The notes: generated by a model not told the origin, from the letters alone. Counted from the stretch's first letter, positions 16,038-41,375 are shown. The stretch is DNA of 64,000 nt from Botryllus schlosseri (GCA_051294905.1 CM119372.1:5270001-5334000), one strand, 5' to 3'. Translations and numbers: made by a program.

Positions 16038-19000
16038 TCAGTCGCATGAGACGCTGGCTTCGTGGACACATGCGTTAACCGTATCATCGAAGGCCGTGCC
16101 CGCTGAACATTGGAAATGGTACGCTACTCCGTTGGAACAGCGGTAGTATGAGTGGCAGTCGACTTTATGATACCCACTCTCACCCGCCTGTCAAAATAGA
16201 AAACATTTTCCCATTCACTGTGTAATAGCAACGTATAAATTTCTATTAAGGACTCATGCAAAGCTAATGCGCTGGATTTTGTGTCAGCCGATTCAGAGGA
16301 GCAAATATAGTCGTACAGAATACGAATAGGCATTAAATTTGGCATTGGCACACGCGGTGGTGTTAAGCGAATAACTATAAGCGGACATATTTTGGTAGAA
16401 TAAGCAATGGTAGGCTATAATGTCACGGCTCATTCGTTGTAGCCCAAACGCGGTCAAGTCATGCATGTGAAATGTGAATTACACTCGAGTTACCCGAAAG
16501 AGCAGAAGCAGATTTAGCTTCGTCCAGTTACGGTCATCACAGAAATATATAATTATGGTTAGTTCTCGTATGCATCTCAACCTCGACGCTACTACCCCCG
16601 AGGAGTGTTTTTTAGTTTAAAGGGGGAAATACTCTAGGGGCGCTGCGATGCTATGGGCAAGAATATCGTACAACAGTATTCCAATTTAGATCTCACTGCA
16701 AATTTACTTCCGAGCAATTATTTGGGCTCGAATCTGATAGGTTTGAGCTATACCGGAAGCTGTAATGACAGCGTCCAGCAAATTTATATTGTTAATTAGT
16801 CAACAGGTCATTCGCCGACATCCACGCCCTAAATGTTTACGAATTCAAGCACGAGCTCGAAAAGCCCGACCCGGCTTCCACCTCTATCCCATCGTCTTTA
16901 ATACAGCACCAGACCATGAAAAAATATGAAAGGGAGCGCTGGAGAAAGAAATAGTTAAGAACCATCGATCTAGACCAGAGGCCTCAAACACGCGGCCGGC
17001 GATGGCATTTTGGAATTTCAAGTATTCAACAATATATTGAAGTGCCATATATCTTTTTTAGATATAAGAACTTGAAGTTCACGCTAAAACGACTATAAAA
17101 TCATGGAAATCTTAAAGAACTTCACTATCACATCACTTTTAGCACTTTTAAAAGCTGCCATGCGTCACATTTCTAGTTCATAATGATAAAACATCACGCG
17201 TTACTGATTCGTGACTGAAAATTGTGATTTGGTTTGGTGCGACCTTCTCGTAAAATTACTCGATTTTTGTTTGACTGGGTGAATAAATAAAAATGACTCG
17301 AGTTGAGTCGTATCAAACGTTAAAATCAGAGAAGGAACGGTAACTTGGTCATCCTACGGACACAACGATCTATGAAGCTGTCATGGGAACTAGTAATGTA
17401 TTAAAAGGTCGTAGCTTGCGTTGCGTATGGTAAATAGCTATAAGCATTGGTATTCTGTGACACACGTGACGTATAGATGGTTACATGGTGGGCGTTGTTT
17501 GTTCCCTTTATCCATATTGTTATCGGTGGCGAGTAAGCTGTAGCACCAATGAATGCTTCGCCCATTGAACATTTCTATTCCAGTGGTTCTTAACCAGGGT
17601 CCGTAGACCACATCGGGGTCGAAGCACCACATCAGGGTGTACGAGATGCATTGTAGAGTTAGGCCTATATGCTGTGGAATATTTTCTTGGCCAATTTATG
17701 CAACTGGAAAATAGTCTTCGCTCTACGCGCGATTTTATGTGAATAGCCGATACTTATCACGACTACATCAAAACCAGGATTCGGCTACACCACTCAAATG
17801 CTTTGATATCAAATCAATCTTCAGTAGGTTTTCAAATATTCTACATGAAATAGTGGCACGTCAAAGGTTCACTAGCTGCAATACTATAACCCGATAGTTT
17901 TACGATGTCATGATGCATCCTCTCGCATGATGTCTATAACTCATTAATTAAAAAAAATTATGCCCGGCACAGAAACAATATTATTCAAATATTTGAAAAT
18001 GTGATTTTTTTCGTGTCAAGCGTGAATAGTACAATAGTAAATTACATTTCCTCGATGTTAGTGGGATACATGCCTGCAAGGTCCCGTCAAATAGGGCCTA
18101 CGTGGAAATTATACATTGAATATCTCTATTATTGATGCTGCGGCCCACGGCGTCATCAAAAACTAATAAATTGGCCCGCGAGGACATTTGAGTTTGAGAC
18201 CTCTGATCTAGATTATCCAATGTCAACCTCGTTCTCATGTCCCTAGCAACACCATTGGATCAAGAATCTCACCGCGCATTGACTGTTCTGACTTGACGTA
18301 GACGTTGTGGAAGTTGAAGTTGAAGTGGTACTCTTGCTGGTCTCTGGCGCAGTAGTAGTTGTAGTTGTTGTAGTAGTAGTAGTACTAGTAGTAGGGGAAC
18401 TTGCACCAGAGTCTGGTATGGTGGAGCTTGCCGCCGTACTTGTAGCAGAGTTATCGCCGTCCTGTAATAACAGAACAAATATTCGGAAAAGCAAAAACCA
18501 GAGAAGCCGAAGCAACTACCATGGCCATGCAACTACTTACCCTGTAGCCAGGAGGTGGCAACACAGAGTCCACACCAATTGCAACGTCGGCACATCCGTA
18601 AAACTCTTCTTGCGGTCCCTTGCCCAGGCCGCAATCGTTTGCGCTGTCGCATCCCCACGAATTACCTAAAATAACATCCAAATTTCCGAATAACAAACGC
18701 GCATGAATCTCGGCAGTCGCTGCGCGTTGATAGAAGTGGTGACATCTTGCTTACCCGTGCGATATCTCCATTGCAGCACGCACTGATCGCATGTTACATC
18801 GCTCGGCAATTTGACCTGAATATGGTAGTACCCAGTTTTGGGGTTTTCATCTGTAATGTCGTATTGGGTAGTATAATCATTCGTGACCGGAAGCAAGTAT
18901 CTGAAATTTGGGCATCGATAAATTCGACCTTTGGTCAAAAGTATATTATATATGGAGCCGCAGGCCTATTTTTCAAACAAATGAAAATGATGATCCCTGT

Positions 19001-22000
19001 GTATAGTCAGATCGGATTTTAGTATGTCTATGAGACTGATGAACATTTATACTCACTGGTTCAGGCAATCGCGCGTGATTACACTGGTCACGTCGTCCCA
19101 TGGGCAAAGTCGAAATTCGAAGAATCCACGATGATGAGTTGTTATTTCGATCGTAACGGATATCCAAGCACCTGCTTAGAAATAACGATTTCAGTGCAGA
19201 ACTACCAACTACCTTCATACATACTCAGGTATGATAAAAAAAAGTATATCTCAGCGGTTCTTACCATTACTAACATGGGGAGCATTTACACTAATCTGCA
19301 AGCCTTCCCGAAAACCTGAATATTCGCTAAAACTACCAAAATGCGTATCAAATACATCACTGCATATTACTGGTGCACAAATTGAACTAAGCGGCAATAG
19401 ATTGTCGTAAGAACATATTCAATAAAATATTGTTTTCACGCAAATCAAAAACATTACAATGAATATTTCTTGCAAGTCACTGCCACTTGTGCCGTCTCCT
19501 TTAAGATATCAGTTCAGAAATCCTAGGCTCTTCTTTGGAAAGGACTGTCATGTTGATCACAGCAGCATGATACCAATTTCGCAATTGCAAATGAGCATAA
19601 AATATTGGAGATAGAATTACCAGTTCGAAAGGACAGTGTTTCGATGTCGGACTACAATCTCATCTGCGTATATACGCCGCTTCATACGACGTACCACCAC
19701 AAGAGTCGCAATTCCACTGATGATCGGCGTAATTTCTAGAATCCAATGATAGCCAAAACGGGTGTGTTATCGAAAATAGAGACCTCCATGTCTAAATTAG
19801 TTGAGCGTGTGTCGTCACCCCCAGAGAACCCCTGCTACCAGGGCCGTAACTGCCGCCCCCACCCACTTCCCAATTTGGAGGGCGAGATCGAAGGGGACTC
19901 AAAATCATTTCGAAAATCAATATAAATTAAAAAGTGTTTACGGAAAAACGATACACCTTCAAAATTTTATGGAATTGAATGTCTACTTTTTAATATGGGT
20001 ACCCTCCGCGCCCCAAGAAAAAAATACGCATCATTTATGAAAAAAATATACATTTCGGTACCGGCCATCACTGCTCCACGACACACCAAGACTTATGAAG
20101 TTTCGGCCAACATGCGACCTCGCGAAGCAGTGCGTTACCAAATAAAACCTTGACCTAAAATAACCGCGGCATGTTGACTGAAAGCATCAATATATATTTA
20201 GTCCATAGGCGCCTAGCCGGGGCGGAATAGTCCTCTGCTTGGTATTCGAAGTCACCATCGCCCTCAGATCTACAGGTAAATCTGATCACGTGGGCTGGGA
20301 GAGGGTGAAGAATTATTTGCAATATATGCAATTACCAATATTATAAACCAAATTGATATAATTTTTTCGCGCCTCGCACGACTACAGAAAGGGTGACATG
20401 GGTGCCTTAAAACGCCTAAAGCTTTTTTGTACTGTTGCCCGATACGACGGGGGGTCTGGGGGGCGACGCTCCCAGAAAATTGGTATATGACCTAGTGGAG
20501 GATCAAGAACAACGTTTATTTGGGGGGGAGGGCTGCCGAAATAATGATTCGGCCCTGCCTGTGACTGACTCAGTGAACCCCGCGTGATAGGGACACCGGT
20601 TAAGAACTGGACTACAATAATTCTCCAGACTTAGGCTTGAGGTCGAATAAAAGAGTGGGGAGTTAGGAAATTGTAGCGTAAGTACACACATAGCTCCAAT
20701 AAGTAGTGGAAAGAGATGCTGGTATGCCGAAAGCCAACGAATGCCAATTGCTAAAAGAATAATTTCATAAAATATTCATCTTGTTGCCGACGAGGCCTAT
20801 CATATAGCGAAAATATACTATGGCAAACAACTAGAGCTACTATTCGCACCTTGCTGGTACTGACGAACGATGATTCCCTTCGCGTATGTTCCGCCTGCGA
20901 CATTTTCTGGGTTCGCCGCATCATAAGCATCGCCACATACGCCGCACATGCCCCCGAGTGAAGCTTGATGCTGAAAGTTTAAGCGAGGAATATGCTGTTT
21001 TATAACGAATTTCTATTACGATTACATGGGGCTTATAATCCATTGAACAAGCATTCTTGTCAGCTATTCATACCGATAAATACTAATCTTCCCATTGACG
21101 ATGCTGAATGCACACTGTAGGATCCAGCAGGATAACAGATTTCATATTCTTGGAACAGTTTGTCGCATTTACCATTTGAGGTCAAGTTTTTATTATGATA
21201 GGCAACAATTCTGCGAACAGAGCTTATACGCGAAGGCATAGGTAGTTAGGCTTGCGCAATAATCGACTTTTCCGAGATTGCTTATGAAATTTGATTCGTG
21301 AGGCCTTTTCTTTGGCCTATGTTGACCCCGGGGTCACTCATGACTGCCCATGCTTATGAATCCGATATAGGATGTCACTATTCAGACTTCATAATCTAAC
21401 TGTTATGATCATTGAGTCATCAAGTACAGACATATCCATTTCAGTCATCACCACGATCTTTTCGCCTTGGCACTGTTAGTGTGCACTGTGCAGATCATCT
21501 TGGCTACTGTTCAGCGGATATATGTCTAGTTTTCCGATTGACGAAATAGTCTCGTTCTTTCCCTCTCTCCTGCTCATTCTTTAACCCACTCAAAGCGGCT
21601 AACGACACCCTAGTCGAAATCGTGTGTTTCGAGCTCAAAATCGTATGTATTTCTTTGTTAGTGAGTGAAGAGAGGCAATGAATGTCCGATACACCACGAT
21701 GCCAGTGACTATTGGAAAACAGCCTAACGAAAAGTGACACCCACACCTCTGTGATACTGACCTGAGCCCCACCGCAGAACAGTTGATTATCATTGTAGTT
21801 TGGTTCAATGATATCTTCATAGGGTGCAATCAAGGGATTGTCATCATTAATGAAACGCCAAACCGATGAGCGACCGGGTGGGTCCATCAGTCGACCATGG
21901 CCCTCAACAGTTGATTGCCAAGAAGTAAAGAATAGCGCTGTAATTTAATCACTCACGTTACTCGACCAGCGATAGGTATATAGATAGATATCTTACCGAG

Positions 22001-22030
22001 AACAGCAATTGTAAGCATCTTCACAGACAT
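16038..22030 (-). CDS. AA15-type LPMO, paralog 1: signal peptide + LPMO domain + S/T linker + CBM14; intact
   Basis: Eight phase-consistent exons: 22030-21997, 21937-21762, 20970-20850, 19171-19057, 18900-18755, 18665-18541, 18461-18273, 16187-16038. Protein: MSVKMLTIAVLALFFTSWQSTVEG|HGRLMDPPGRSSVWRF...NYNDNQLFCGG...CGVCGDAY...GGTYAKG...EITTHHRGFFEFRLCP...CDQCVLQWRYRTGNSWG...PQEEFYGCADV, poly-Thr linker, then six-Cys CAAGESGYHKVDCHSYYRCSNGVAYHFQCSAGTAFDDTVNACVHEASVSCD*. Mature N-terminal His, second His and ExF motif are all present. Confidence 0.95.
16976..18205. mobile_element. Non-autonomous hAT (Charlie/Buster-type) element in the last intron of LPMO paralog 1
   Basis: TIRs CAGAGGCCTCAAAC / GTTTGAGACCTCTG. 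TSD ATCTAGAC/ATCTAGAT matches 7/8. It contains fragments of other MITEs (GACTCGAG block, CAGTGGTTCTTAACC at 17581). Confidence 0.85.
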
Positions 22031-23179: not shown

Positions 23180-24530
23180 TCATTCATCATCATCATTGGT
23201 TTATTAGCAATTTTATCAGTTCAATACACCACAAAAAATGCGATACAATGAAAAGAAAGGAAGATGTCGAAGCGACTGGGAGTTGTCTATGGAATCAGAC
23301 ACCCACCTTGGCCTAGGCGATGTAAAGAGAAGGCATGCACACTGAATGAAAGGAAAGAAGATAGCATAGAAAAAGGAAGCGACAAGAAATAGGGCGGCAT
23401 GTCATGGGAAGCGAGATCGATAGGTCAGTCGTGGTCCGGTAATCTTGAGGATGGACTAGCTGTATTTATTTAGTAATAATTGCTTGTATTTCGACTTGAA
23501 TGTGGACATGCTCGTCGACTGCCGGATGGCCGGCGGGATACTGTTTCACACATCAGGTCCGGCATATTTGATAGAGCGATGATCTTTTCGGTCGATCATA
23601 TGATATTTGGACGACGTGGACGCGCGTGTGTTGTAGGCCTACTTGTGCGCTTTTGATTCAGAGGTAAAGAAGTCATTGAAATATTCGGGGCAGCGACCGC
23701 AGTGAAACTGATACATAAACTTGGCGATTTCTAGTTTCCGCATATCTTCTATGTTTAGGACGCCGAATCTCTTCAGCAGCGACTTATTGGATGGGCAGCC
23801 AGGCCCCTTTGGGGCCCTAGCTATGATTCGGAGTACTTTATGCTGTAGTTTCTGCAATGGCTTGAGTGCAGTTTTACTGGCAGCCCCCCAACAGAGGATG
23901 CCATAATGTAACTTCGATTGGATTAAGGATTTAAAGAGTATCAGAACAACCCATGCTGGCATGAAGCGCCTAAGGCTGTAGAACAGGCCGCACTTCGGTG
24001 ATAATTTAGTTTCTAGGGACTGAATATGAATCTTCCAGGACATGTTCAAGTCCAGTAAAACCCATTATCTGTGTTGGAAACGGGCAGACCAGCGACATTA
24101 ACGGTTAGGTTATTTTTTGAATTTACTGTCAGCGATTGGGATTTCGCGGCTTTTATGCAAAGGTTGTCCTGGGCCGTCCACTCATGGACTTTAGGCATCT
24201 GGTCACCAGTCAGGGCATCCAGCTCTGCCGTCGAAGATGCGGAAGAGAGGAGGTGAGTATCATCAGCGAAAAGTGTGGTGTTCAATGAAGAGGTTCCAAA
24301 AATGTCGTTGACATATAAGGTGAAAAGGACCGGTCCAAGTACTGAGCCTTGGGGCACACCACAGGTCACCAGGTGAGGAGAGGACAAGGTGTCTGAGATT
24401 GCAACCATTTGTTGGCGTCCAGTGAGGTAACTTTTCATGAGCTCAAGTTGTGGGCCCCGAAGTCCGTAGCGCGCCAATTTCGAGATGAGAATTTTATGAT
24501 CTACGCAGTCAAACGTTTTTTTTAGATGTT
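23180..24530 (-). mobile_element. 5'-truncated, inactive CR1/L2-group LINE (RT C-terminal half + 3' UTR)
   Basis: RT motifs LKKTFDCVDH, GVPQGSVLGP, LFADDT, then LHYGILCWG and YNTR...SIKYAGPDV*NSIP...FKSKYKQLLLNKYS* (native stop 23456-23458). A frameshift near 24050 and two premature stops are present. About 270-nt 3' UTR ends in (TGA)n. Confidence 0.9.
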
Positions 24531-25649
24531 GTGTAATAAGAGGTAAATACTTCCAAGTTAGCATGGACATCCAATTAGTGCCAATGAGTGTTTGAATAGA
24601 CGAAGAGTAGATTACCATCAGGAAGAAAGACTGCTGAAAATAGCAGCGCTAATGTATGCCTTATTAAGCGGACATATCCGCGAAGAAAATGGGTGCTAAT
24701 AGATCTTCAGCAATCCAAATATTAGTTACAAACCTCATCGTGTGTTTCATCATATCGTGGAACACAAAACAAACGAAACGAGCATCTTGTACTGGTCAAA
24801 GTGGCCAGCGTGTCGAATCGAACAAAAAGTATCGATATAAAAGTCATTTCAAAACTATCTCAGGTGGCAGTACAAAATGAAGATCTAACTTGTTCTATAA
24901 AGTACATTTGGTAGAGGGACCACAAACTTTTAACAGTTAATAAGAGGTGCATATTCTTTCGAGATTGCGGGACGCAACGCAGAATGACTAAATGACACTA
25001 TGGGCGATTTTAGAAGATATATTATATCCAGTTTCCGTGTTACTGGGGCTCTTTATGATAATATCAATCGTGAGATTATATTTTCATCTGCCCCAGACAC
25101 GCAGCACACACGCAATGTAAAATGTGATATACAAGGCAAAATGCGACACAGCTGCGACACCAATGTGTTGCGGGTTATAGTCCGATTGAGGTCGAATCCA
25201 GAGTTCCTACCTAAGTGTTGGGAGTTTATCTAGGCTCCCCCTCGTCATCTCATCCGCGTAAGCGGTGTCTTATAAAAAGCCTAGAAGTGGGCCGTGCTAC
25301 AAGTCGGAAGCTACCAAATAAAATATGACGAATATTGACCTAATGTAAATGACGATAGTAGTCGACAAACACCATGAATACCACATGGATACAATATAAC
25401 CACTTGACAATTATTATTAGTATTGTTAAAAGTTTACAGTGGCACTTATCACCGGTTAAGGTCGTATATTCCACTTGAGTAAGTATAGCGCAAGTAGGCA
25501 AATCGTTTTTGAGTATTCCCAGAAAGTAGTACTTCGTTACTGACCAGCACTGTGTATTCGTATCGTACTTGATCAGACAGATGTTACAATATAGCCTTTT
25601 AGGCATCTCCAGACATATGGCCAACTTGCCTCGTTCACATTCCCCATGG

Positions 25650-28490: not shown

Positions 28491-31400
28491 TTAATTCTTC
28501 AGATTGTCTTTATCTAGTACATATTGCAAATGTAAATATCTTATTCTAAACCCGAAGGATGTGTATCCTCTCCTCACCCCACAAGGTGGAATCACGTTAT
28601 ACACCCAATCGCATGGCGGCATCCCGTTTTGACCGACTACCAATCCCGCCGGACAGTCGTTAGCAATCCATTGCGAATGTACACACCAATAGTAGCTGTA
28701 GCAGTCCCTCGACGAAAACTCACCTTCCTTTATCATGAAATAACGGAATAGTATTTCAATCAAATGCGCATAGATATATGATCGAGCTGCGTGCGTACTA
28801 ATGCAATATATTTCTGGTTCTGCGTTTACGCGCTTTTGGTAATGACAAAATACATTCTTCGACATGCTACTCTATACTTGAAGGACGATTCGGGTAGATG
28901 TCATTACTGTTCTTAATTAGACTCGATAAAAATTGGTCATTTTACGTGCAGAGTTGATATTAAAGTTTCCGACATGAAGCAGAAATACAGCTCAATCAGA
29001 ATTCGGAATCCATCCTACCTTACATTTGACAACATTTGATTCTGTTGTTGTTGTCGTGGTGGTCTTCCGAGTTGATGTCGATGCCGGCGACTTTCTTGTC
29101 GTTGTTGTAACCTATTTTTTTTTTATGTAATCACAATATTCAATGATTTAAGTGTGACCTTAATGAATGATTATAAAAGTCGCTATACGTCCTACAATAA
29201 AAATAAGAAAAAATAAAAACGAAAATGATATAAACAGAAACATTTGAACATTTGGCAAGATTCGTTGCACAGTGACTGTACTGGTACTCTCCCAGGCCGA
29301 TATGAGCTGATTAGCATTACTCATGTTCTCAGTGTCAATAATATTTCTCAGATATTGGTTACGCTCACTCTTACCGGATGGATCTGTACAGTCTGTAAAC
29401 GATTAGTAGACCTATAATATACTACATATGGATACTTAACAATCCTGAAAATTCACCGCCCGTTCGTGACTTACATAATGTTACCTGTGATTTTGCTGAC
29501 GTAACTTACTGTAACTATGAAACACAACAGGCTGGAAACCAAATTTCATTCTCTTACCGACGGAGTGGACGGAGGCGTTATCATGTCATCTCCGATCGCT
29601 ACGTCCGCGCACCCGTAAAATTCTTCCTGTGCGCCACAGCCGATGCAGCCTACTCCATCAGGACCAATCCCCCACGAATTCCCTTTTTTATTGCGACGAA
29701 AAGTGTGTGTTTATCTTATGTCCCCAAATAAACCAATCAGGTGTTCGGAAATCTATCGCTTTGACAATACAGGTGAAAATTTTGTGGGATATACATATTA
29801 TGCTGATACTCTAAATTTTAGATAAATATACCTTTCTGGACGTTTGTAGGCTCGCCACGTGTTAGTTATATATACTTAAGTATAGTACCAGAACCGTAAC
29901 AGCACTTCGTCAGCCCTCCCCCAAAACGTTGGTCTTAGGCTCCCCATAGGGTGATAAACCGAACTTCTGGGGGGCTTTGCCCCCAGACTCCCCTCACTTT
30001 CTACGCCTTTGTCCTGTTGTTTATCATCTACATTGGATAGTATATTCATATTGAAATGCAGCAGATGCAATATGAATATACTATTTAATTGTATATTGAA
30101 GTCCTGTACCTCCAAGAACATCTACATTGGGTATCAGTCTAGTCAGCGAGCATGTATTGCCCAAAAATTCTATAATTCATGATTGAATCGATCAATATAA
30201 TCGGGAATTGCATATATATTGCTATCAATTTTTATCCTCTCTCTGCTCACGTAATCGGATTTACTAGTAGAGCTGAGTGAGGTGTGTTGGAAAAGGTAGG
30301 AACCCGAAATAATAATTATACATCTTCGGGGGTACCCGTTGGTATAATGACTTCGTTACATGATGCTATTTCGGGACCTCCCATCTGCTGTGTCAAAAGA
30401 TATTGAAATCGCCCAAACGTACTAAACTTAAAGACGTGCACGATTTCCAATTGGTATTTCTTTACTGACAAAAAATATTCCCTGTGGGATGCCATTTGTC
30501 TTGTGGGGCTCAGATTGCCAGGATAGGGACATTCGGCACCAGCCATTTTTCGGCCTATGGACAATTAAACATATATGTATATTGTAGGGATGGTGTGAAC
30601 GTGACGTTCACGTTCACGTTCTGTGTGTTAACCGCAGAAACCGCAGAGGTCCACGTTCACAAACGAACCTTGGTAGTTCCGCACTGTGAACCTTTTTCAG
30701 ATATTACGATTTTTGACGTCATTATAATATCTATGGTTAAAATTTATTGCATTTCAACGGCGGGTCATAGTCTATGCATGACCCAGACAACATAAAAAAA
30801 TCAAAACTAAACGAACATGCACCTTGACAATTTTAAAAATTTACTTGCTTTGTTACGAAAGTTTGCTCGAAATACCCAGCTTCCCGTTTGTGAATATTTC
30901 GTGAATCTCTGCTGTGAGCTTGACCCGCAGTCACACAACATCAAGAGGTATAGTCAGAGAATGATGCTTATTCAATCAATCAATGAAATTGATATCGTTG
31001 TCTAATGTGAAAAAATATTGCAGGGTATATACTGTTGTGTAACTTGTATGGGGTAATCTCGGTAGCAAGTATAGAAACCCATTTTACACTCTGCTCAATA
31101 TCAAGGTAACAATGCTCAGGCGCCGAATACATTGTCCGGTCTGGCCTAGACCGTCGAAATTGTTGACAAAGCGACGGAAGACATTGATTTTATGGGATTC
31201 TTATATTATATAATTTGATTGCACCGTGCAGTTGATACATTTGGCGACGTTTAAAAAGTCAGTATGTACTTCATCATTGCGACATAATGCGGCCTGAGCC
31301 GTCGCTTTAGGTATCGTGTACTGTACATTAATATTTTACTACACTGAAATGTAGGGTTGGAATTAGCAATATGACGTCACGAGGTTCACGTTCGCGTTCA

Positions 31401-33963
31401 CACGCCCCTCAACGTTTCAGAGGTTGACACCATCCCTAGTATATTGTACACATATCGAAGTTTTCGGTCAGCACAAGGGCATAGTCCTTTTCGGCCAAGG
31501 TCTTCTCGCTGCCGATCGTTCTGGCGCACTTCTCGGAGTCGCATGTTACATGGCCTATAACTTCATATGTCTTGGTGCGTCGTGCAAAGCGCCCATTTCT
31601 ATAAATCATGCGCATTTCTTGTTGGGGGAAGGGTACACAATAATCAACATATTTGACAACATTAAATTGCGCGCAGTGCGGAAAAAAAGTTTCATAGATT
31701 CCCAAAAATATACTCTTTGATTTATGTTAATTCACGAATCAATTTTGGCTCCCCTTCGAGTTCGCCCCCCCCCCCCGCCAATTGGGAGGTTTAGGGTGCG
31801 GCAGTTACGGTCCTGCATAGTACAATTCTATTTCAAGAGTATTCTCACCTGTGTGATAGCGCCATTGCATCACACACTGACTGCATTCTAAATTGTCAGG
31901 TAGTTTCACAAGAAGTTCGTACACTTTCTTGCTAGGTGCACCCTCTGGCAAATAATATCTTGTTTGTCCCGTTGCCGTAAATGTGAGTAAATTGCTGAGA
32001 CGACAAATGAGAGGAGTAGCATTGTATATTACGAGAGCTTATTTTTAGGTAATATTACCTATTCAGGCAGTCGTGAGTAGCTGCATTAGTAGGGTCATTA
32101 ACTGGACATATTCTGAATTCGAAATATCCCTTGTGACTGGCGGTAAGGTCAACTCGAACAGCGATTGTTTCCCCTGATGTAAACTAAAGGTAAGGTTCGA
32201 AATACTCTACAACCGTTGAAAAGATATTACCGATCGCGTATTGAGCCACGATGATCCCTTGAGCATATTTTCCACCTGCTTCGTTCTCTCTACGTCCGTC
32301 AAAAGGGTCCCCACAAACTCCGCATTTGCCGCCTTGAGACACCTGATGCTGAAACAACGCTCATATACTATTAGTATTGGTTGTAGTTTTGATATGGCTC
32401 CCTTGCAATATGATTCGATTCAAGCTAGTAGGCCTACATATAAGCTTTTTCCAGGAACTGCTTGCAGAGTTTGTAGAACATCATTGCATTGGTATTTAGA
32501 AATCAAGCCAGAACAGTTTGATTTCGCAGTAGCAACATGCATATTGAAGTAGTTGTAAGTTGGTTTGGCTGAACTTCGCTGACTGCGTAATCGCGTCTGG
32601 CTTTTAGATCCCCATGTCGTATGCTGCATGACAATTCCAGTCTCTAACAGGCCTCGGACGACACAGCGAAATTCCAGTCAGCTAATTTGAGTGGTTACCA
32701 ACCTTTTTCGACTCATCGCACCCTTATCAAGTTCGACGCAAATTTTCGGAACCGAAAAAAGAGGACATATAAACTTGAAATTTTATACAACTAAACTCTG
32801 ATCTCTGTTGAATCAACTAAAAATCGATATTACCCCCGAAAGACCCGTCTCCACATATAACACTGGTCAACACATATTTTTAGGCGGACAAAGTAAGAGT
32901 GGTTTTGGGAGTTCTTCGTTGGCTCAGCGGAAAATTGTCCATTTACAAGTCAAAAGAGATGAACGTATATTGACAAATTCGATAGCTATATATTCCTCTT
33001 TCATCTTGGTAGAATGACGAATTGGTACAGGAGAAAATATATTTGCGTCGTGCAAAAGTGCAATTTTTAGGCTTGAGAAACTGCTTTTTTATCAAACAAA
33101 GATCTCGCATAAGGTCATGTTAATATTGATGGAATAACTGAGAACGACATGAGAGTTCTTCATAGTCAATTATCTATTTAGGCGCAGTATAAAAGTAGAA
33201 AAATCAAAGATTTACTTCCTACCAAGTGAAATATTCAGAGTGAATACAGTGATTTTCGGCTTTTTTAGGGATTTAAGTATCTTCTTCTCTAGAGCCAATC
33301 TGGTAAAACTAACGTGATATTCGTAATCAGCAACCTTGGAAACCCCAGAAACGACTACTAGATGTTCTGTCAATATTTTTCACTCTGTTATCCAGTGTAA
33401 TTAACGGGGCTAACCTTCTTTTTAGTCAACTTTCGAGTCAGATCCAACACAACTCGTTTTTCACCAGCATTTCATGCCGATTAGTTAAATAATTAAATAT
33501 ACCCGTTCTAACATTCCCCCTATCGCCCCCTTCTTACGCTTTTGCCCTCCAATCGGCCGTTCTTTATCTGCCCCCCCCCCCCCGTTTCTCAAAATCTCTC
33601 ACTGGGGAGGGAGTATCTGCCGCGTTGGGAACCACAGAGCTAATATGTTCGAAATGCTTTCCATTCAATTCAGTTTCTACCTGGAAGCCTCCGCAAAAGA
33701 GCTCGTTGTCATTATAATTTGGTACAACTTGAGACTCGTACGGTTTAATCAGCGGGTTGTCGGTAAACCTCCAAACGGAAGATCGACCCGGTGGCGATAT
33801 CAGCCTTCCATGACCGAAAACCAGAACTGGCGCGATAACCAGCACGATGCAGATTCCTATAAAACACGAGACATTGATTTTGATTTTGCATACGCTGTTA
33901 TACGTATTCACGCTAAATGGAACGTAACCAACCGTAATTCAACTGTAATTCGCGAAGTAGCAT
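28491..33963 (-). CDS. AA15-type LPMO, paralog 2: signal peptide + LPMO domain + Thr linker + CBM14; intact, exact C-terminus uncertain
   Basis: Exons: 33963-33933, 33856-33681, 32348-32231, 32173-32059, 31994-31849, 29682-29558, 29111-29019, 28727-28578 (GTGAGG donor) or read-through to the stop at 28491. Protein: MLLRELQLNYGICIVLVIAPVLVFG|HGRLISPPGRSSVWRF...NYNDNELFCGG...CGVCGDPF...DLTASHKGYFEFRICP...CSQCVMQWRYHTGNSWG...GCIGCGAQEEFYGCADV...KCKEGEFSSRDCYSYYWCVHSQWIANDCPAGLVVGQNGMPPCDWVYNVIPPCG. Confidence 0.93.
30585..31438. mobile_element. hAT-type MITE (TAGGGATGGTGTGAAC family) in an intron of LPMO paralog 2
   Basis: TIRs TAGGGATGGTGT / ACACCATCCCTA. Perfect 8-bp TSD GTATATTG. Contains GTGAAC/GTTCAC repeats and is colinear with 46209-47176. 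Confidence 0.9.
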
Positions 33964-35712
33964 TGCTGGTTTCGATACGTGTTGTCTGTTGTCGTTTTGT
34001 CTGAAAAAGGCAAAAGTATAATATTTTAAACTGCAGGACACGAGGTTAGTCTGTCACACATATTAGCCACACTTGGCAGCCCCCGAAGTAAAGCTGTAGC
34101 GTACCACACTTATCATTATCGAATTTGATCTTAGCACAAACGAATACCGCCTGTAAACTACAGGGCGAGGAGGAATCTTAGATAAATTAAATAAAATTGC
34201 ATTCCCTTAAATTATGCCCTTTTGCACACAGGGTCGCTGGAACAGAACAAAGGATGAAGCACCCTGCAGTAGGTATGGATTTCGCCTACCTTACTGTCTT
34301 CAGATGGCGACACCGTTCTATCGACGATAACGCAGAGACCGCTATATATGTAGCCTGCTAGATGAGTCAAGGGATAATATTAGAATGTAACTGCATATGC
34401 GTTGTTCTGTCAAACATCCGTGCCCATTTTACAGTAATTGAAATGCGATATACAGCTTGAACAATTTGTTTCCGACGGTGAGGAATGTGACGAATACATA
34501 CGGTTTGTACTATATGACAAATTCGATGCCTCATACGAATTAGATTCAAATTTTTAGCCATAAGCGTTATCCGTAACAACCAACGCTTATGCATCTTTAT
34601 ATTATAACGATAGCGAATATGGAAATGTAAGCTTTACTGTCGTATGATGCGTGTATTTAGTCACCAATGAATGAATTATACTTTAAGGGAATGTTAGGCA
34701 CCGCCTAGGCGCCTAGTACGTTATCACAATATATATATTATAGGCAATGCTGCCTGATATCCAGGACGAACCATAACATTTTATCCTCAAATTTTTGTCT
34801 AATCTTTCTCACCGATCCTGCAGATGAACCTGTACTTTATAAATGCGCGCTGTGTCCCTGCGAGCGACTGGATTCATGTTATAATAAATGGGATCGACGA
34901 GAGTTTATGCACCTATTGCTTGCAATATATATATATATATATTGCCCCTATTACCTGCCCCTATTACCTGCCACTATTACCAATATAGGCTATGCATTGG
35001 GTATTTGTAGATCCACGCCCCACTACAACTCCGACTCATTGCGATTGAAAATTGAGACTATCTCCACCAAGACATTGATATCAAAATTAGCCACCCTATC
35101 CATCGTGGACAAGTAAAAAATGTATGCATAACCGTAAAATTCCCCTGCCCCATGGTAGATTAACATAGCTATGGTCGATTTGTTAAAATGCTCGATTTTA
35201 ATTGCTGAGAGTATGACCTGGCTATAATATGTTCATTATATAGTGCGAAGTAGGCCTATTGGATAAAAAAAAGTTGTTTGAATATTGTATTATTCGTTTC
35301 ACGGATATAGTATATGGAATGACATCATTCTGCGGAGGTCGTGCGATACCGGTGTTCAATAATTTCCTCCATTCTGTAGTTGATATTTGATCTAAAAGTG
35401 CAAGAATATTTCCACGAAACCGTTGATGTCACCGGAACGAAATTCTCCATACCCAGCACGGTGGTTCCACTGGCTTGGTGAGTGTGCGCAAGCTCGTCAA
35501 AAAGTAGAGGGAACATTGGTTGTAGCCTACTGCTTAAATGCTTAAATAGCCTGAATTACTAACTATCCGTACAATATATATGGAAAACGCAACTGTCGTC
35601 TGTTGAACTGTCAGTCAAGAACTACACAGGACGTTCGTATCAGCCAGTTAAGTATTTTGTAAGCCGCCATCCGTAGACCATCCGTATACTATCGAAGTGG
35701 ACCCGTTAAACA

Positions 35713-35865
35713 AGTGCTTTGGAGCCGGAGCCGGGGAAAGGAGCCGGAACCCCGGAGCCGTGTATTTTCAACAGAGCCGGAGCTAGAGCCGAAGCTCGGA
35801 ATAAAATTCTGATGGAGCCGGAACCTGAGCAGGAGCCGGTTGTCTGAAAGTAGCTCCTGATCCGA
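35713..35865. repeat. GGAGCC(GGAGCC) repeat cluster, probably the subterminal region of a hAT-like MITE relic
   Basis: About 9 GGAGCC/GAGCCG units in 150 bp after CAAGTGCTTT. No partner terminus identified. Confidence 0.5.
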
Positions 35866-37741
35866 TGTATTTCATAAGATGCTATATACTAATACTTTTG
35901 GCTGAATTCACAAAAATTTTCGGTAATCGTTCAAAAAATTAGGAATTGTTGCCTCGTTGGCGCCACCTTTTTTAAACTAAAATGTTTCAATTGTTCATGT
36001 TCAATTGATCATACATAAGGCGCTAAACCTCGGTATGCGAGATATGCCGTGCATACTCCGTATTTACTGTATTGTGGAACATGGTTATTCGTCATACCCG
36101 CAATTTCGTCATCAGCACAACAATGATAGAGCGGTTCGAAAAATATTGATCACTATTTATTTTACAAAATAGGACGGGTGCTCATGTGAGCTGAGCAAAT
36201 TAACTAATGAGTAATTAGGGGATAAGACGAAGCGATGCTAGAGTAGGGTTACCATATTTCTGTAATCCAAATTCCGTACACTCTTTAGCGCCCACTACTG
36301 GATTTCAAAATGAGTTGTGACGTCACACTAGCAAAGCTTTACTCATAGACCAGAGGTGGTCACGATGCGGTTCAGGAGTATGTGGCTGTGTGTTGTGTAA
36401 CCGGGACCGAAACCACTTTTTTCATCCCCATCCCGCCAAATAAACAATGATTTTGAGCCCACCATAGAGTAATCGATGCCACTTTTTTTTTTTTTTGGGG
36501 GGGGGTTGCTGTATGATTCCATATGCATCTAGTCGTTAAATTGTTTTGAATGAATTCTGTCAATAATATTGGTTGTTTCATATATTACTATATAGTTACT
36601 ACTCTACGCCCACATGATCAGAGTTGGCGGTAGAGCTGGTGGAGGATGATGAATTCGAAAATACGGGGAGCGTAATTGTACATCGCTAAGTCATGTTCAT
36701 GTCCCACCAATAAGATTGTTTATCAGCCTTATGCCGGTGCGCACCACGGAGCTTTATAAACACGCCACATCCAGTGGTTTCCAACCTTTTATGGTCGCGA
36801 CTCCATCTCCAATTTGAAAATGTTCCGCGACCCAGATCAAAATTTGACGAGCTGATTACTAAAAGAAGTCAGCACCTTTGCCCAGACTTACCTGCGGGCT
36901 GTTTTGGAAGCTGATTACGTTCAACATGTTCGCAAACCCCAGAATAAAGGCAAACGACACCCACGTTTGGAACCACTATCTTTGAATAAAGAATTTTAAC
37001 GGCCTGAACGATATCTAGGAATATACCGTTCTCGTATAATTGCCATTAGAGTTATTTCAGTAAATGAAGGTTGTTTTTATTTATATTTTATTGCAGTTTT
37101 GGCGAGGGTGGTAGTCCCCATATTAAAATTAATAAATGTGATAGTAAATCGCGCGCAGCGCGAAGAAGAATGTCATGCATCAGCATAAATATTCCCCAAA
37201 ATAATGTTATTATGTTGATTTACGAAAAAATTATGAGGCCACGTCAAAATTCCGGACAGTTGGCATATTTTAGAAATTCCTCACGGACGCTACTTTGAAC
37301 AGTGAAATTCCGGACATGTTCAATCATACATCACATGCGCATGATCGTGAATAACTACAAGAGGTGTCATTTTCGTAAATATATTCAGTTGGTAGGAGAG
37401 CTATTTCAACCAGTTGCTTGCTATGGCAATTAAAGGTGATAAAGGTGATGTGAACATACTCCAAACTGCATTCTACTTTACACAATACAAAGTGTCAAAA
37501 GCAAGTAGCTGTGCCTTTAAAACTAGTAAGTAGAACTTGTATAGTAGTCTAAAACATATCCACTGGAGTAAGTAATGCAGGTAGGCAAAACCTATGCTTG
37601 AGTAATCCAAAATAGTGTAAGTGCTTCGCTAGCGACCGCTTCCGGAAACAAATCATGATATACGTATTTATAGATGACTCCTCCTGTAACACAAAACAAA
37701 TTGAACTGACGGTGCATTTTTCTTCTCCTTCCGAACTTCAC

Positions 37742-40700
37742 CGGGTGGCAGCGACGTACTCGTTGTTGGATTTATAGCAGTGATCGGTGGTGACTTGGTC
37801 GTGGTCGTTGTCGTAGTGGTGGTCTGTTATTTGTTTTTAATACTGTTTTGTTGGTCGTATTTAGGTGATAACGAAATACAAGGCGTATTTTGGTTACAAG
37901 TGGTTTATTACCATCCCACCTGCCCATCTCCAATTGCAATGTCTGCACATCCAAAGAATTACTCCTGCGGCCCGCATCCGACACACCCAGTACCATCCGG
38001 GCTTTTGCCCCATGAATTTCCTAACGAAATTATTCAGGATCGCTCGTTACTTGATTGTATATTTGCCGCTTCCATTTCGAGATAAAAACAATTAAACAAC
38101 GCATTTCATCCCTAGCTCGAGATATGCTCTGCCTGTTTTTTTTTTGTTGTTGTTGTTTGTTTGTTTGTTTGTGTGTTGTGGTCTTCATGGTGTTTGTCGG
38201 CTACTACGGTCATTAACACCAGGCCGATATTCTTCGTTTTTAGTTCGTTAGCCGCCGACTTGCAGTGCGGTCCACTTGTAGGCTTTTATATAACACCGCC
38301 TACGCCAGGGTTGGCCAACCGGTGGCCGTAGAAGGAAATTTGTGCAGCCGTGGCACGTAATTAAGTTAGTATGTGTTGTTGGCGACCGTCGACTTGAAAA
38401 TTGAATTTACGAATTGACTGCCAAATTTTCAAGAGATTTTAATTAGCCTATTTTGAAATTTTCTTCGCAGGGTTAGGGGTTCGTACCCCCCCCCCCTTTT
38501 CAAAATCATCAAATTTGCTGTCGCATCGGCGACTAACACAAATGACGAATTCGATCTACCCGTCATCGTGCGCCTCGAAATCTTGGATTGCACGATACCT
38601 TGATTGATACCTCGACATGGCGACGCTTGTAGGACAATGCAGTTTTCAGATACACATTGTCTTCCATGATCTACGCCGATAAATAACTTCCTTGTGTAAG
38701 TTGCATAAACAATTACAAATTCAAATTAAAAACAACCCCATAACTATTCGGTTGTTGAGTGGTAACGTAAGTAGCTTTCTAGAATCGCCGTAAAATATAG
38801 GTGTGTAGCGTTATGTTACGCGGAATACTTGAGAAGTCGATCAATACATAGATTTTCGGAATCAGCGCGACAATTTCATTTGAATAATATCAGTGATGAT
38901 AAATTCTAAGTAATTTACGATGAGTTGCGCTATCACAGGTGAGGCTTGGCCCATCTGCGCCGCATCTGTGCCTTAACCCTCCTTTTGCGCTTTATATCGA
39001 ACAATAAATATAAAAATTCCGTTATTTTGGAAAAAGAAATGCTTAAAATCTAATCATTCCTAAACATCGATAAAAATACCAATAATCATTGAAGGTCTCA
39101 CAATTTTCCCTCGCTCATCCCTGACGACATGTGAGGCACTGCCTCACTTGCCTCCCCTAACCCCACGTCACTGACATATCACATCCTGCAGTGGGTATGT
39201 ACTGCTGTAGTGACCATGTTTGGCTCATCCTGCGTATGTGGGCAGAAAAATATGGCGCACACTGCGAATCCCATACATCAGTGCTACCAATACGTCACGA
39301 ATTTTCAATTGTGACATAACAGTTGATTGACATGTATGGCCCTTTGAGAAATACAATTAGAAATACCGGGTCAATATGACTTTTCGGTCGAAAAAGGTTC
39401 CCGACCCCTGCACCATACCGACAATCCTGATGGGAGGACAAGAAATAACAGCATGTTACAAGGTGAATAATTACAATCGGCCCACCCGAAAATACATCAT
39501 CGTTTATAACTTGCCCTAAATTTTTGAAAACACACCCTCTACCGGTGAATGAGATCACATAAGCTGAGAAAGGATAAATGTTTGATGGTAATACGTGAAA
39601 CTACGAATATAATTTACGAAATTCATCTGTGAATCTGAAGCTCAGCGAAAAATGGATATGTACAGTTTAAAATGGGTATTTGGCGTTCATTTTGTTCATT
39701 ACGAACTATGCCACATGACTAATCGAAATGAGGCCGTGAATAGATTGGCCACCCCTGGCCTATTGTTGTTGTTGTTGTTAGTACTTGAATATGATGATCG
39801 GCTACTATGGCATTTTACACCAGGTCTGAAGAATCTGAAAGTTCGTTACGGTTACAATTCTCTGCCGATGACCTACCCGTATGATATCGCCATTGGAACA
39901 CGCACTGGGCGCAACCGAAGTCGTCTGAAAGCTTTACTTGGATTTTGTAGGTGCCAGCCTGCCATGCGTTTGTGGATAGGAAATACTTGGTGTCTCCGTT
40001 TTTCAGTTTCAGAAGGTTTCTGCAAAGTTGTTCAACAATAGCTTCGCACATCGATTCGACATCAAATTGTGATAAGGACAAGAAAGGTCAATACACGCTA
40101 TATTTTATAGAGCCTATCCGAGTCCATCAACTCTTGTCTGCAATATATAGGCCACATCACAACCACTTGGGCGGTTTATATGGCGTTTAGCAGAATCAGG
40201 AGGCCTTAAGCCATGCGTACAGTGACTTGGATTATTTGCTAGCCAAAATTATACTGATGGAGGAGCAGGACAAAGCATATTAACCACACAAGTACATAGA
40301 TGCGCATGCGCATTGCGCATACACGGCACGCACGGCACGGCATACACGGCACGCACACACCCGTCAAGGCATTCCCTGGTGGCACGTCCGTTGGGGTATG
40401 CCAGCGGGTACAGCCTGAACTCAAAGTAACCCTTGTGGTGGGCGGTGATTTCGACGGATACGGTGATCATCTCACCTGCAAAAGGTACACGATTTGTTCA
40501 TCAATTCGCTCGCGAGTTATTGGGTTAAATTTGCGACATTATCTTCGTCGTATTTCCCGACAATGATTCCCTTGGCGTACTTACCGCCCGCTTCGTTGTC
40601 TCTCGGTCGGTCGTAAGGGTCGCCACAAACACCGCATTTCACACCGACTTCAGGTTGATGCTGAGCGTTAAAAAAAGACTGAATGAATTTGGATGCCAAT

Positions 40701-41375
40701 ATCGGATAATCAATTGAGGCTCTTATCGTAGTATAAAATATTTATGCATAAAAACGCGAAAGGGCAAAAGCGACGGTTTTGGTTCTCAGCCTTTTTCTCG
40801 TCTCGTACCATTTCGAGGTTTCATGATTTGGTTGCATACCAACAAATTAACGAAAAACTACTTTATACTCGAAATGTATCTAGGATTATTAACATGGGTG
40901 GATTAGCGGAGAAGTCGTCCGAAGCACGAGCTAATCAGCCCCTATTATTAATAACACACACTAACAAGGCAAAATTAATGCTATTTTTTCTTTTCTTTTT
41001 CTCCACAAGCTGATCTAGGCGAGGTGCAACTAAATTGAAAGACGCATGAAGTATTTATATATGCATTCGATGAAGACAGCTCTTGCATTAGAAAAAAATA
41101 CGTTGAAGATTTGTGAAAACAGTACTTTTGCTTCAAACGAAATGCATTTACTAGATACCATCTGCAAATGGCTTTCCGTATTACTAGTGGGCGTCTTACC
41201 TGTCCCCCGCAGAACAATTGGTTGTCTCCGTAGTTTTTCACTATTTTGGACTCATGCTGTTTGATCAGAGGGTTCGTGTTTACGAATCTCCACAAAGATG
41301 ATCGACTGGGGGGATCAATCAATCTACCGTGACCCTCGACGGTGTTGGACGCGTGTAGCAACACGACAGCCAAGC
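37742..41375 (-). pseudogene. AA15-type LPMO, paralog 3: pseudogene or null allele
   Basis: Exons: 41375-41200, 40660-40543, 40475-40361, 40019-39877, 38020-37920, 37823-37742; the first four sizes are 176/118/115/143 nt, matching the paralogs. Lesions: donor GT>AT at 40542 (intron retention hits TAA); TAA in place of GAA at 37959-37961 (PQE*FFGCADI); conserved RLCP reads RLYP. No ATG exon or CBM14 exon found. Confidence 0.88.
38306..39757. mobile_element. Aged hAT element with nested fragments in an intron of LPMO paralog 3
   Basis: Termini CAGGGTTGGCCAA / TTGGCCACCCCTG. Flanks GCCTACGC/GCCTATTG match 5/8. An internal right end GGTTCCCGACCCCTG lies near 39410. Confidence 0.6.

What the first reader, a model, noticed from the sequence alone, without database searches (positions are those of the whole stretch)
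21790..21860. All three LPMOs carry an approximately 10-residue insertion between WRF and NY(N/G)DN
Seen: spacers between WRF and the Tyr are INDDNPLIAPYEDIIEPN (18 aa), TDNPLIKPYESQVVPN (16 aa; about 33715-33765) and VNTNPLIKQHESKIVKN (17 aa; about 41230-41285), with a conserved NPLI core. From memory, arthropod AA15s have about 7 residues here (GFxTPxN). The following Tyr is the position I recall as a surface aromatic (Tyr24 of Thermobia TdAA15A). Inference: a conserved, probably helical insert next to the binding face may define a lineage-specific subfamily with altered substrate or regioselectivity.
Basis: partly seen in the sequence, partly recalled or inferred. Interest (0 to 1): 0.7.

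Follow-up and report, generated by a model that had tools for sequence, protein, structure and literature searches.

The report
Tunicate-specific loop insert in AA15 LPMOs
The three tandem copper enzymes (AA15 LPMOs) in this window really do carry about 10 extra residues beside a substrate-face tyrosine, and the insert is a conserved hallmark of sea-squirt and other tunicate AA15s that protostome AA15s lack; its effect on function is untested.

Summary
Confirmed. Three tandem, intron-bearing, minus-strand AA15 LPMO genes have 18, 16 and 17 residues between WRF and the Tyr of NY(N/G)DN. TdAA15A (PDB 5MSZ) has 7 (GYNVPPN before Tyr24).

The insert marks a clade.
- All 13 named tunicate AA15 domains place this aromatic at mature position 31-34 (Styela, Clavelina, two Ciona species, Oikopleura).
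- It sits at position 24 in 51 of 53 mollusc, 7 of 8 annelid and 4 of 5 arthropod domains.
- A tree built without the insert columns separates long from short forms at one branch (support 87/88).
- An oomycete AA15 has the aromatic at Tyr26, so the short form is probably ancestral.

The family-wide motif is D-P-x-[ILV]-x-P-[YF]-x-x-x-[IV]-x-P-N-[YWF]. "NPLI" is this genome's own version. An AlphaFold2 model of a Clavelina orthologue (pLDDT 97, TM 0.90 to 5MSZ) puts a short helix inside the insert.

Genes 1 and 2 look like intact secreted enzymes with an axial Phe and a CBM14 module, so they are predicted to act on chitin. Gene 3 looks like a decaying copy, with an in-frame TAA, a lost disulfide Cys and a lost splice donor.

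Any change in substrate or regioselectivity is untested. I could not measure how far the insert lies from the copper site. I found no paper describing the insert. I class it as a new variant of a known kind, of moderate interest.

The parts
16038..22030 (-). Gene 1: complete AA15 LPMO of 351 aa, made of signal peptide, AA15 domain, Thr-rich linker and CBM14. Exons: 22030-21997, 21937-21762, 20970-20850, 19171-19057, 18900-18755, 18665-18541, 18461-18273, 16187-16038.
   Evidence: Hand-built GT-AG model that translates without stops. Ten Cys in the catalytic domain. CBM14 exon matches PF01607 at E=3.4e-12. 61% identical to Clavelina P0169.
21798..21851 (-). Gene 1 spacer I17-N34 (18 aa) between WRF and Tyr35. 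The residues in excess of the short form are about L23-P33 (21801-21833).
28560..33963 (-). Gene 2: AA15 LPMO with Thr-rich linker and CBM14. Catalytic exons: 33963-33933 (exon 1, tentative), 33856-33681, 32348-32231, 32173-32059, 31994-31849, 29682-29558. The linker exon is near 29111-29020 and the CBM14 exon near 28727-28560 (its ends are not fixed).
   Evidence: CBM14 matches PF01607 at E=1.2e-5. RNA reads of run X11 cover exons 2 and 3.
33717..33764 (-). Gene 2 spacer T17-N32 (16 aa) before Tyr33.
   Evidence: RNA reads span it with no gap or joint. All variants seen in the mature part of the exon are synonymous.
37920..41375 (-). Gene 3: AA15 catalytic exons 41375-41200, 40660-40538, 40470-40361, 40019-39877, 38020-37920. 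Probably a decaying copy.
   Evidence: In-frame TAA at 37959-37961, also flagged '1 TAA'. Cys-to-Tyr change at 40408-40410. The homologous splice donor G|GT reads G|AT at 40541-40542. No CBM14 exon was found downstream.
41233..41283 (-). Gene 3 spacer V17-N33 (17 aa) before Tyr34.

Best explanation
The window comes from a tunicate genome. It holds that genome's only detectable AA15 LPMO genes, as a tandem trio. All three carry a roughly 10-residue insertion in the loop between strand beta-1 and the conserved NY-D-N-LFCGG segment. This loop corresponds to the L2 substrate-face loop of AA10 LPMOs.

The insertion is shared by tunicate AA15s and probably arose once in the tunicate stem lineage. 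Its motif is D/N-P-x-[ILV]-x-P-[YF]-x-x-x-[IV]-x-P-N-[YWF].

It folds as a packed short helix followed by a turn, ending one residue before the surface aromatic equivalent to TdAA15A Tyr24. Geometry therefore places it at one edge of the flat copper-containing face, where it most likely enlarges or reshapes that edge without touching the histidine brace.

The enzymes are otherwise canonical. Each has a signal peptide cleaved before His1, a second brace His in T-H-H-R/K-G, an axial Phe, ten Cys, and a Trp at the Tyr166 position. With a C-terminal CBM14 they are predicted to be secreted, C1-oxidising, chitin-directed LPMOs. Plausible targets are the animal's own chitin-containing matrices, such as the gut envelope membrane.

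Shown: the sequence facts, the taxonomic distribution, the single tree split, and the helix in a high-confidence model of an orthologue. Inferred: the exact position relative to the copper, any effect on binding, the substrate, and the polarity of the change (insertion rather than loss).
For: - Sequence and coordinates.
- TdAA15A has 7 residues and Tyr24 at this site. Tyr24 and Tyr166 bound the flat face: PMC5823890.
- A profile of the three exons against 1.84 billion representatives gave 536 hits. The best roughly 40 have full-length spacers, and the rest mostly have the 7-residue GFxxPxN form.
- Named carriers are Styela, Clavelina, Ciona intestinalis, C. savignyi and Oikopleura.
- Position of the aromatic residue by taxon.
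- Careful maximum-likelihood tree without the insert columns: long versus short is one bipartition, support 87/88, present in 89% of bootstrap trees.
- AU test does not reject one clade, p=0.81; the constrained tree was better than the quick free tree.
- Oomycete AaAA15A has Tyr26, His96 and Phe187, which is the short form (PMC8393829).
- AF2 model of P0169:19-216: pLDDT 97, helix at residues 24-29, no low-confidence segment. TM 0.90 and 46% identity to 5MSZ.
- Motif conservation over 32 sequences: D 26/32, P 25/32, aliphatic 31/32, P 23/32, Y/F 26/32, I/V 31/32, N 30/32.
- RNA reads cover the insert-coding part of gene 2, and all variants in the mature exon are synonymous.
- CBM14 hits.
- Axial Phe goes with chitin-only activity in TdAA15B and AaAA15A.
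- The Ciona gut membrane is made of chitin with some cellulose (PMC6109156).
- The LPMO orthogroup is present in all tunicates compared and absent from the other chordates compared (PMC8704543).
- AA15 exons in the whole 495 Mb assembly lie only in this cluster.
Against: - The model is of a Clavelina orthologue (61% identical to gene 1), not of the window's own proteins. I had no coordinates, so the distance and orientation of the insert relative to the copper and the binding plane were not measured.
- The insert region is less conserved than the rest of the domain (mean pairwise identity 0.36 against 0.53).
- Appendicularian-type sequences have a shorter 14-residue version that lacks the P-[YF] pair.
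- One Styela paralogue (P0106) has a divergent insert.
- The same loop also varies in protostomes: 10-12 residues in springtails, Lingula, Paralvinella and some bivalves, and an unrelated 14-residue spacer in a scallop. Loop length here is evolutionarily plastic and could be neutral.
- Many long-spacer hits come from unnamed assemblies, so carriers outside the tunicates are not excluded.
- Polarity rests on one published oomycete numbering, not on a rooted tree.
- No biochemical data exist for any tunicate AA15.
Confidence: 0.6

Rival explanations
1. Neutral, lineage-specific loop expansion. The insert was fixed once in the fast-evolving tunicate lineage. It is kept only because its hydrophobic residues now pack against the core. 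It does not change substrate range, regioselectivity or partner binding.
For: The same loop shows independent, unrelated length changes in springtails (11), Lingula and Paralvinella (10), bivalves (10-12) and a scallop (14). The insert is less conserved than the rest of the domain (0.36 against 0.53). The brace, the axial residue and both surface aromatics are unchanged.
Against: The motif has been kept across appendicularians and three ascidian orders, and across old paralogues only 56-61% identical. The model is confident and helical rather than disordered. The insert abuts a residue implicated in substrate binding. Only synonymous variants were seen in the mature exon of gene 2, though the sample is small.
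Confidence: 0.3
2. The long loop is ancestral to animal AA15s and was lost in protostomes, so it is not a tunicate innovation.
For: The tree is unrooted. One bipartition cannot distinguish gain from loss. No cnidarian, echinoderm, hemichordate or cephalochordate AA15 was examined.
Against: The oomycete AaAA15A has its surface aromatic at Tyr26 and its brace His at 96, which is the short form (PMC8393829). Every arthropod, mollusc, annelid and brachiopod group sampled has 7 as the commonest length.
Confidence: 0.07
3. The extra residues are an artefact, either an unspliced micro-intron or an assembly or annotation error, and are absent from the mature protein.
For: The gene models here are hand-built. 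No RNA joint was recovered for these genes.
Against: The extra 27-33 nt are in frame, have no stop, and are too short for a spliceosomal intron. RNA reads of run X11 run through the insert-coding stretch of gene 2 with no gap or joint. RefSeq models of four other tunicates include the insert, as do short contigs of about 1 kb that encode the whole protein in one uninterrupted frame.
Confidence: 0.01

Closest known systems
TdAA15A, Thermobia domestica AA15 LPMO (PDB 5MSZ; Sabbadin et al. 2018)
   Same: Same family and fold. The orthologue model has TM 0.90 and 46% identity to it, with HMMER E=1.3e-46. It shares His1 directly after the signal peptide, a second brace His, ten Cys forming five disulfides, the NY-D-N-L-x-CGG segment holding the Tyr24-type aromatic, and an aromatic at the Tyr166 position (Trp here).
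   Different: TdAA15A has 7 residues (GYNVPPN) between WRD and Tyr24; the window genes have 16-18. Its axial residue is Tyr184; genes 1 and 2 have Phe. It is a single-domain gut enzyme active on cellulose and chitin; the window genes carry a Thr-rich linker and a CBM14.
Chitin-specific AA15s with axial Phe: TdAA15B (Thermobia) and AaAA15A (Aphanomyces astaci)
   Same: Both have an axial Phe and the short loop. AaAA15A also carries a C-terminal extension thought to bind chitin (X474). The window genes share the axial Phe and a chitin-binding module, so the same substrate is predicted.
   Different: Their surface aromatic is at position 24-26 and they have no helical insert. AaAA15A has only two disulfides in its homology model and a different C-terminal module. 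AaAA15A is an oomycete virulence factor, not an animal's own enzyme.
Annotated but uncharacterised tunicate AA15 proteins (Styela clava, Clavelina lepadiformis, Ciona intestinalis, C. savignyi, Oikopleura dioica)
   Same: Same insert motif and the same AA15 + CBM14 architecture (PF03067 + PF01607). They are 51-63% identical to the window genes. A tunicate-wide LPMO orthogroup has been noted before (PMC8704543), as have tunicate AA15s (PMC5823890).
   Different: In the papers I could search, none has been studied biochemically and the insert is not described. The window genes use N-P-L-I where most others have D-P-A/x-I.
L2 loop of AA10 LPMOs, e.g. CBP21 of Serratia marcescens, with Tyr54 on the binding face
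   Same: The topological position is the same: a variable region containing short helices between beta-1 and the next core strand. It forms much of the substrate face and carries a key aromatic. This comparison rests on my own knowledge of the AA10 literature. CBP21 is named as the best structural match of TdAA15A.
   Different: AA10 is a different family, only 12-20% identical by Foldseek. Its L2 loop is much longer and cannot be aligned residue by residue.

Membership tests
AA15 LPMO (CAZy Auxiliary Activity family 15) | N-terminal His exposed by signal-peptide cleavage (His1 of the histidine brace) | tested here: met
   All three genes read a hydrophobic leader, then G|HGRL. The exon 1-2 splice of gene 1 gives MSVKMLTIAVLALFFTSWQSTVEG|HG. 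The cleavage site is inferred, not predicted with a tool.
AA15 LPMO (CAZy Auxiliary Activity family 15) | Second brace His (His91 of TdAA15A) and axial aromatic (Tyr184 or Phe) | tested here: met
   T-(H/S)-H-(R/K)-G aligns with A-P-H91-I-G, and Q-E-E-F-Y-G-C-A-D aligns with Q-E-E-Y184-R-N-C-A-D, via orthologue P0169. In gene 3 the codon just before the Phe is a TAA stop.
AA15 LPMO (CAZy Auxiliary Activity family 15) | Ten conserved Cys (five disulfides) | tested here: met
   Genes 1 and 2 have 10 of 10. Gene 3 has 9 of 10, with F-E-F-R-L-Y in place of F-E-F-R-L-C. The ten-Cys rule is from PMC5823890.
AA15 LPMO (CAZy Auxiliary Activity family 15) | Significant sequence and fold similarity to a characterised AA15 | tested here: met
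   Orthologue P0169 (61% identical to gene 1) hits 5MSZ at E=1.3e-46. Its model has TM 0.90 to 5MSZ. Direct exon-level tests on the window are weak because the exons are short: PF03067 at E=0.022 and 5MSZ at E=4.2.
AA15 LPMO (CAZy Auxiliary Activity family 15) | Copper-dependent oxidative cleavage of chitin or cellulose | not testable with these tools
   Needs recombinant protein and activity assays.
CBM14 (peritrophin-A chitin-binding module) | Match to PF01607 above the gathering score, with six Cys | tested here: met
   Gene 1: 46.7 bits against a cut-off of 22.1. Gene 2: 25.8 bits against 22.1. Gene 3: no CBM14 exon detected between 34000 and 37700.

The most novel reading that the evidence does not exclude
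The helical L2 insert is an adaptation of tunicate AA15s to the polysaccharide matrices peculiar to tunicates, the only animals that make cellulose. By extending the aromatic and polar platform next to the Tyr24-equivalent residue, it would let a chitin-type (axial Phe, CBM14) LPMO bind or cleave mixed chitin-cellulose fibrils. Candidate targets are the gut envelope membrane, the tunic and the appendicularian house. That would make it an animal LPMO that remodels the animal's own cellulose-containing matrix.
Probability: 0.12. Interest if true: 0.7.

Novelty: new variant of a known kind. Interest (0 to 1): 0.45.

Why it matters
AA15 is the animal LPMO family. Only one structure exists (5MSZ) and only a few enzymes, from insects and an oomycete, have been characterised. 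No member from a chordate has been studied.

A conserved, clade-defining helix next to a substrate-face aromatic gives a concrete handle on how loop architecture sets substrate recognition in AA15s. It also provides a sequence signature for recognising tunicate AA15s in marine metagenomes.

Tunicates have chitin in the gut membrane and are the only animals that make cellulose. Their LPMOs are therefore natural candidates for remodelling the animal's own matrices. If the insert proves neutral, the finding is simply a useful phylogenetic marker in a known enzyme family.

Tried and rejected
- Exon-by-exon Pfam and PDB searches of the window gave only weak hits because the exons are short. Membership was established through full-length orthologues instead.
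- A word-indexed protein search with a stop-free read-through of exon 2 found only two proteins. The exhaustive profile search was needed.
- The quick tree of 118 domains did not recover the long-spacer sequences as one group, needing 4 changes. However, the constrained tree had a higher likelihood. A careful search on 64 rows recovered a single split, so I discarded the quick topology.
- I tried to name the organisms behind the unnamed long-spacer hits. Cluster look-ups gave no names. Contig look-ups gave only an ENA assembly accession.
- Reads: the contigs listed for the DNA run stop at 37950, just short of the gene 3 stop codon (37959-37961), so that stop is not confirmed independently of the assembly. 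RNA depth was too low to give splice joints.
- The window's own spliced proteins could not be passed by reference to the structure or search tools, so an orthologue was modelled.
- I considered and rejected the idea of an unspliced micro-intron (see the rival explanations).
- Literature searches for tunicate, ascidian or Ciona together with LPMO or AA15 found no description of the insert.

Full report
**1. What is in the window**

The finding lies on the minus strand of a eukaryotic, intron-containing region (41% G+C, no N). Six-frame translation finds three copies of HGRL..PP.RSS.WRF...NY.DN.LFCGG, at 21795-21860, 33714-33773 and 41230-41292. I built GT-AG gene models by hand.

- **Gene 1** (22030-16038, eight exons) translates without interruption to 351 aa. 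It has a signal peptide ending VEG|HG, an AA15 catalytic domain with ten Cys, a Thr-rich linker and a CBM14 module (PF01607, E=3.4e-12).
- **Gene 2** has the same exon phases and also ends in a linker and a CBM14.
- **Gene 3** has the five catalytic exons but is damaged (section 6).

The three catalytic domains are 56-61% identical to one another, so these are old duplicates. A six-frame search of the whole 495.5 Mb assembly used the exon profile and an 82-sequence AA15 domain profile. It found AA15 exons only inside this cluster: 3 of 3 and 15 of 15 matches (the tool warns that such counts are lower bounds).

**2. The observation**

N-P-L-I and one Glu are invariant.

HMMER aligns a tunicate orthologue to 5MSZ at E=1.3e-46 and shows TdAA15A as MWRD-GYNVPPN-Y24-NDD. 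Sabbadin et al. 2018 describe Tyr24 and Tyr166 as coplanar surface aromatics. [quoted passage not shown] The excess is therefore 9-11 residues. Multiple alignment places it after the shared [DN]-P and before P-N-Y.

**3. Who has it**

A profile of the three exon-2 peptides was run against 1.84 billion cluster representatives and gave 536 hits. The best roughly 40 match over the full 43-45 positions and have 15-19-residue spacers. Most of the rest have the 7-residue G-[FY]-x-x-P-x-N form, and a minority have 8-12.

Cluster look-ups and a second search, using a Styela protein as query, named the carriers:
- Styela clava: 3 genes
- Clavelina lepadiformis: 5 genes
- Ciona intestinalis: 2 genes
- C. 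savignyi: 2 genes with the relevant region
- Oikopleura dioica: 1 gene, with a 14-residue version

I extracted 118 catalytic domains and located the Tyr24-equivalent aromatic in each.

| Group | Position of the aromatic |
|---|---|
| Molluscs | 24 in 51 of 53 |
| Annelids | 24 in 7 of 8 |
| Arthropods | 24 in 4 of 5 |
| Lingula (brachiopod) | 27 |
| Named tunicate domains | 31-34 in all 13 |
| The three window genes | 33-35 |

Unnamed metagenome and transcriptome-like sequences with long spacers group with Oikopleura with strong support. One is nearly identical to it, so they are most simply explained as pelagic tunicates.

The window's organism is therefore a tunicate. Its species name is coded by the tools.

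Other loop lengths exist but are unrelated in sequence. Springtails have 11 (P-E-F-...; Allacma, Orchesella). Some bivalves, Lingula and Paralvinella have 10-12. One scallop protein has 14. This loop is clearly a hot spot for length change.

**4. One origin?**

I removed the loop columns and built trees. A quick tree of all 118 rows was poorly resolved and needed four changes. Forcing the 32 long-spacer rows together gave a better likelihood (+30.7), and the AU test did not reject it (p=0.81).

A careful search on 64 rows recovered long against short as a single bipartition. Support was 87/88, and the split appeared in 89% of bootstrap trees.

The tree is unrooted, so it cannot say whether the residues were gained or lost. 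The only outgroup evidence I could obtain is published numbering for the oomycete AaAA15A: surface aromatics Tyr19, Tyr26 and Trp170, brace His96 and axial Phe187 (PMC8393829). That is the short form, which favours an insertion in the tunicate lineage. This is an inference from one taxon.

**5. Structure and likely role**

I could not hand the spliced window proteins to the modelling tool. I modelled the closest named orthologue instead: Clavelina P0169, residues 19-216, 61% identical to gene 1, with an 82-row alignment.

- The model is very confident: mean pLDDT 97, pTM 0.92, no segment below 70.
- Its best match in the PDB is 5MSZ (TM 0.90, 46% identity), followed at a distance by AA10s.
- 5MSZ was the only AA15 entry among the matches in this copy of the PDB, and the only PDB sequence matched at E<=0.001.
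- DSSP on the model shows the short helix at 13-16 (M-W-R-x) and a new helix at 24-29 (I-P-Y-K-D-I) inside the insert.

Across 32 long-form sequences the motif is D(26)-P(25)-x-[ILV](31)-x-P(23)-[YF](26)-x-x-x-[IV](31)-x-P(19)-N(30)-[YWF](32). The spacing of the hydrophobic residues fits a helix packed against the core. The insert region is less conserved than the rest of the domain (mean pairwise identity 0.36 against 0.53).

In gene 2, the variants seen in the mature part of the exon are all synonymous: the contig haplotype of the DNA run carries four there (a fifth lies just outside the exon), and the RNA reads add one more and share one. Two variants in the signal peptide change residues. 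RNA reads run through the insert-coding stretch without a gap, which excludes a retained micro-intron.

Both ends of the insert are anchored within two or three residues of the Tyr24-equivalent. It must therefore sit at that edge of the flat face. I could not measure whether it is coplanar with the face.

The catalytic machinery is unchanged. The brace His residues are present, the Tyr166 position holds a Trp (G-N-S-W-G), and the axial residue is Phe. Axial Phe goes with chitin-only activity in TdAA15B and AaAA15A, whereas the cellulose- and chitin-active TdAA15A has Tyr.

Together with the CBM14, the best-supported reading is a secreted, chitin-directed LPMO. Tunicates have their own chitin: the Ciona gut envelope membrane is chiefly chitin with some cellulose fibres mixed in (PMC6109156). 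No evidence here shows that the insert changes substrate or regioselectivity.

**6. Gene 3**

Gene 3 keeps the insert but shows four defects relative to its paralogues:
- an in-frame TAA at 37959-37961, inside the conserved Q-E-E-F-Y-G-C-A-D motif (flagged independently);
- Tyr in place of the fourth conserved Cys, at 40408-40410;
- the homologous exon-3 donor G|GT reads G|AT, at 40541-40542;
- no detectable CBM14 exon. The downstream 35.3-37.3 kb is high-copy repeat.

No RNA reads covered its exon 6 or linker exon (the only gene 3 exons in the stretch laid) in three runs, each sampled at about 6%. The contigs listed for the DNA run stop just short of the TAA, so the stop is not verified independently of the assembly. 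Gene 3 is probably a pseudogene or a decaying copy.

**7. Novelty**

It is already known that tunicates possess AA15s (PMC5823890). It is also known that an LPMO orthogroup is present in all tunicates compared and absent from the other chordates compared (PMC8704543). Full-text searches found no description of this insert and no biochemical work on a tunicate AA15.

I class it as a new variant of a known kind. It is a clade-defining structural elaboration of the substrate-face loop in a well-known enzyme family. Interest is moderate. It would rise if the insert were shown to alter binding to the chitin-cellulose matrices peculiar to tunicates.

An earlier-findings look-up returned only this same finding.

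Noticed in passing
window 37920-41375 (-): stop at 37959-37961, Cys-to-Tyr at 40408-40410, donor at 40541-40542: The third LPMO gene looks like a decaying copy. It has an in-frame TAA within the conserved QEEFYGCAD motif, one of the ten conserved Cys replaced by Tyr, and the homologous exon-3 splice donor changed from GT to AT. No CBM14 exon was found, and no RNA reads covered its exon 6 or linker exon. The stop is not verified independently of the assembly.
   Followed up: partly
whole assembly G000 (window = contig C2:5270001-5334000): Six-frame profile searches found AA15 exons only in this three-gene cluster of the 495.5 Mb genome. Other annotated tunicates have AA15 genes on several scaffolds. 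The tool's counts are lower bounds.
   Followed up: partly
window 23642-24618 (-): A reverse-transcriptase fragment (PF00078 RVT_1, E=6.9e-18) lies between LPMO genes 1 and 2. It is a retroelement remnant in the intergenic space.
   Followed up: no
window about 32576-33367 and 35348-37327: Contig depth in the DNA run rises from about 12 to between 10^3 and 4x10^4, with many internal joints. These are high-copy repeats, in intron 2 of gene 2 and downstream of gene 3's linker exon, where a CBM14 exon would be expected.
   Followed up: no
window 33681-33856 (gene 2 exon 2): The DNA-run haplotype and the RNA reads differ from the window at several sites. All differences in the mature-protein part are synonymous. 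Two in the signal peptide change residues (I to S, V to I).
   Followed up: yes
window 33857 (acceptor of gene 2 exon 2): Three RNA reads of run X11 continue for only three or four letters beyond the exon 2 boundary and then read adapter. The letters agree with the tentative exon 1 end ...TACG. The very short extension might instead mark a transcript 5' end or trans-splice site. Exon 1 of gene 2 is therefore uncertain.
   Followed up: no
related proteins P0049, P0055, P0089, P0002, P0270, P0269, P0212: The same loop has independent, unrelated length variants in protostomes. These are a 14-residue spacer in a Mizuhopecten protein, an 11-residue P-E-F... class in springtails (Orchesella, Allacma), and 10-residue versions in Lingula, Paralvinella and Pecten (P0212).
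   Followed up: partly
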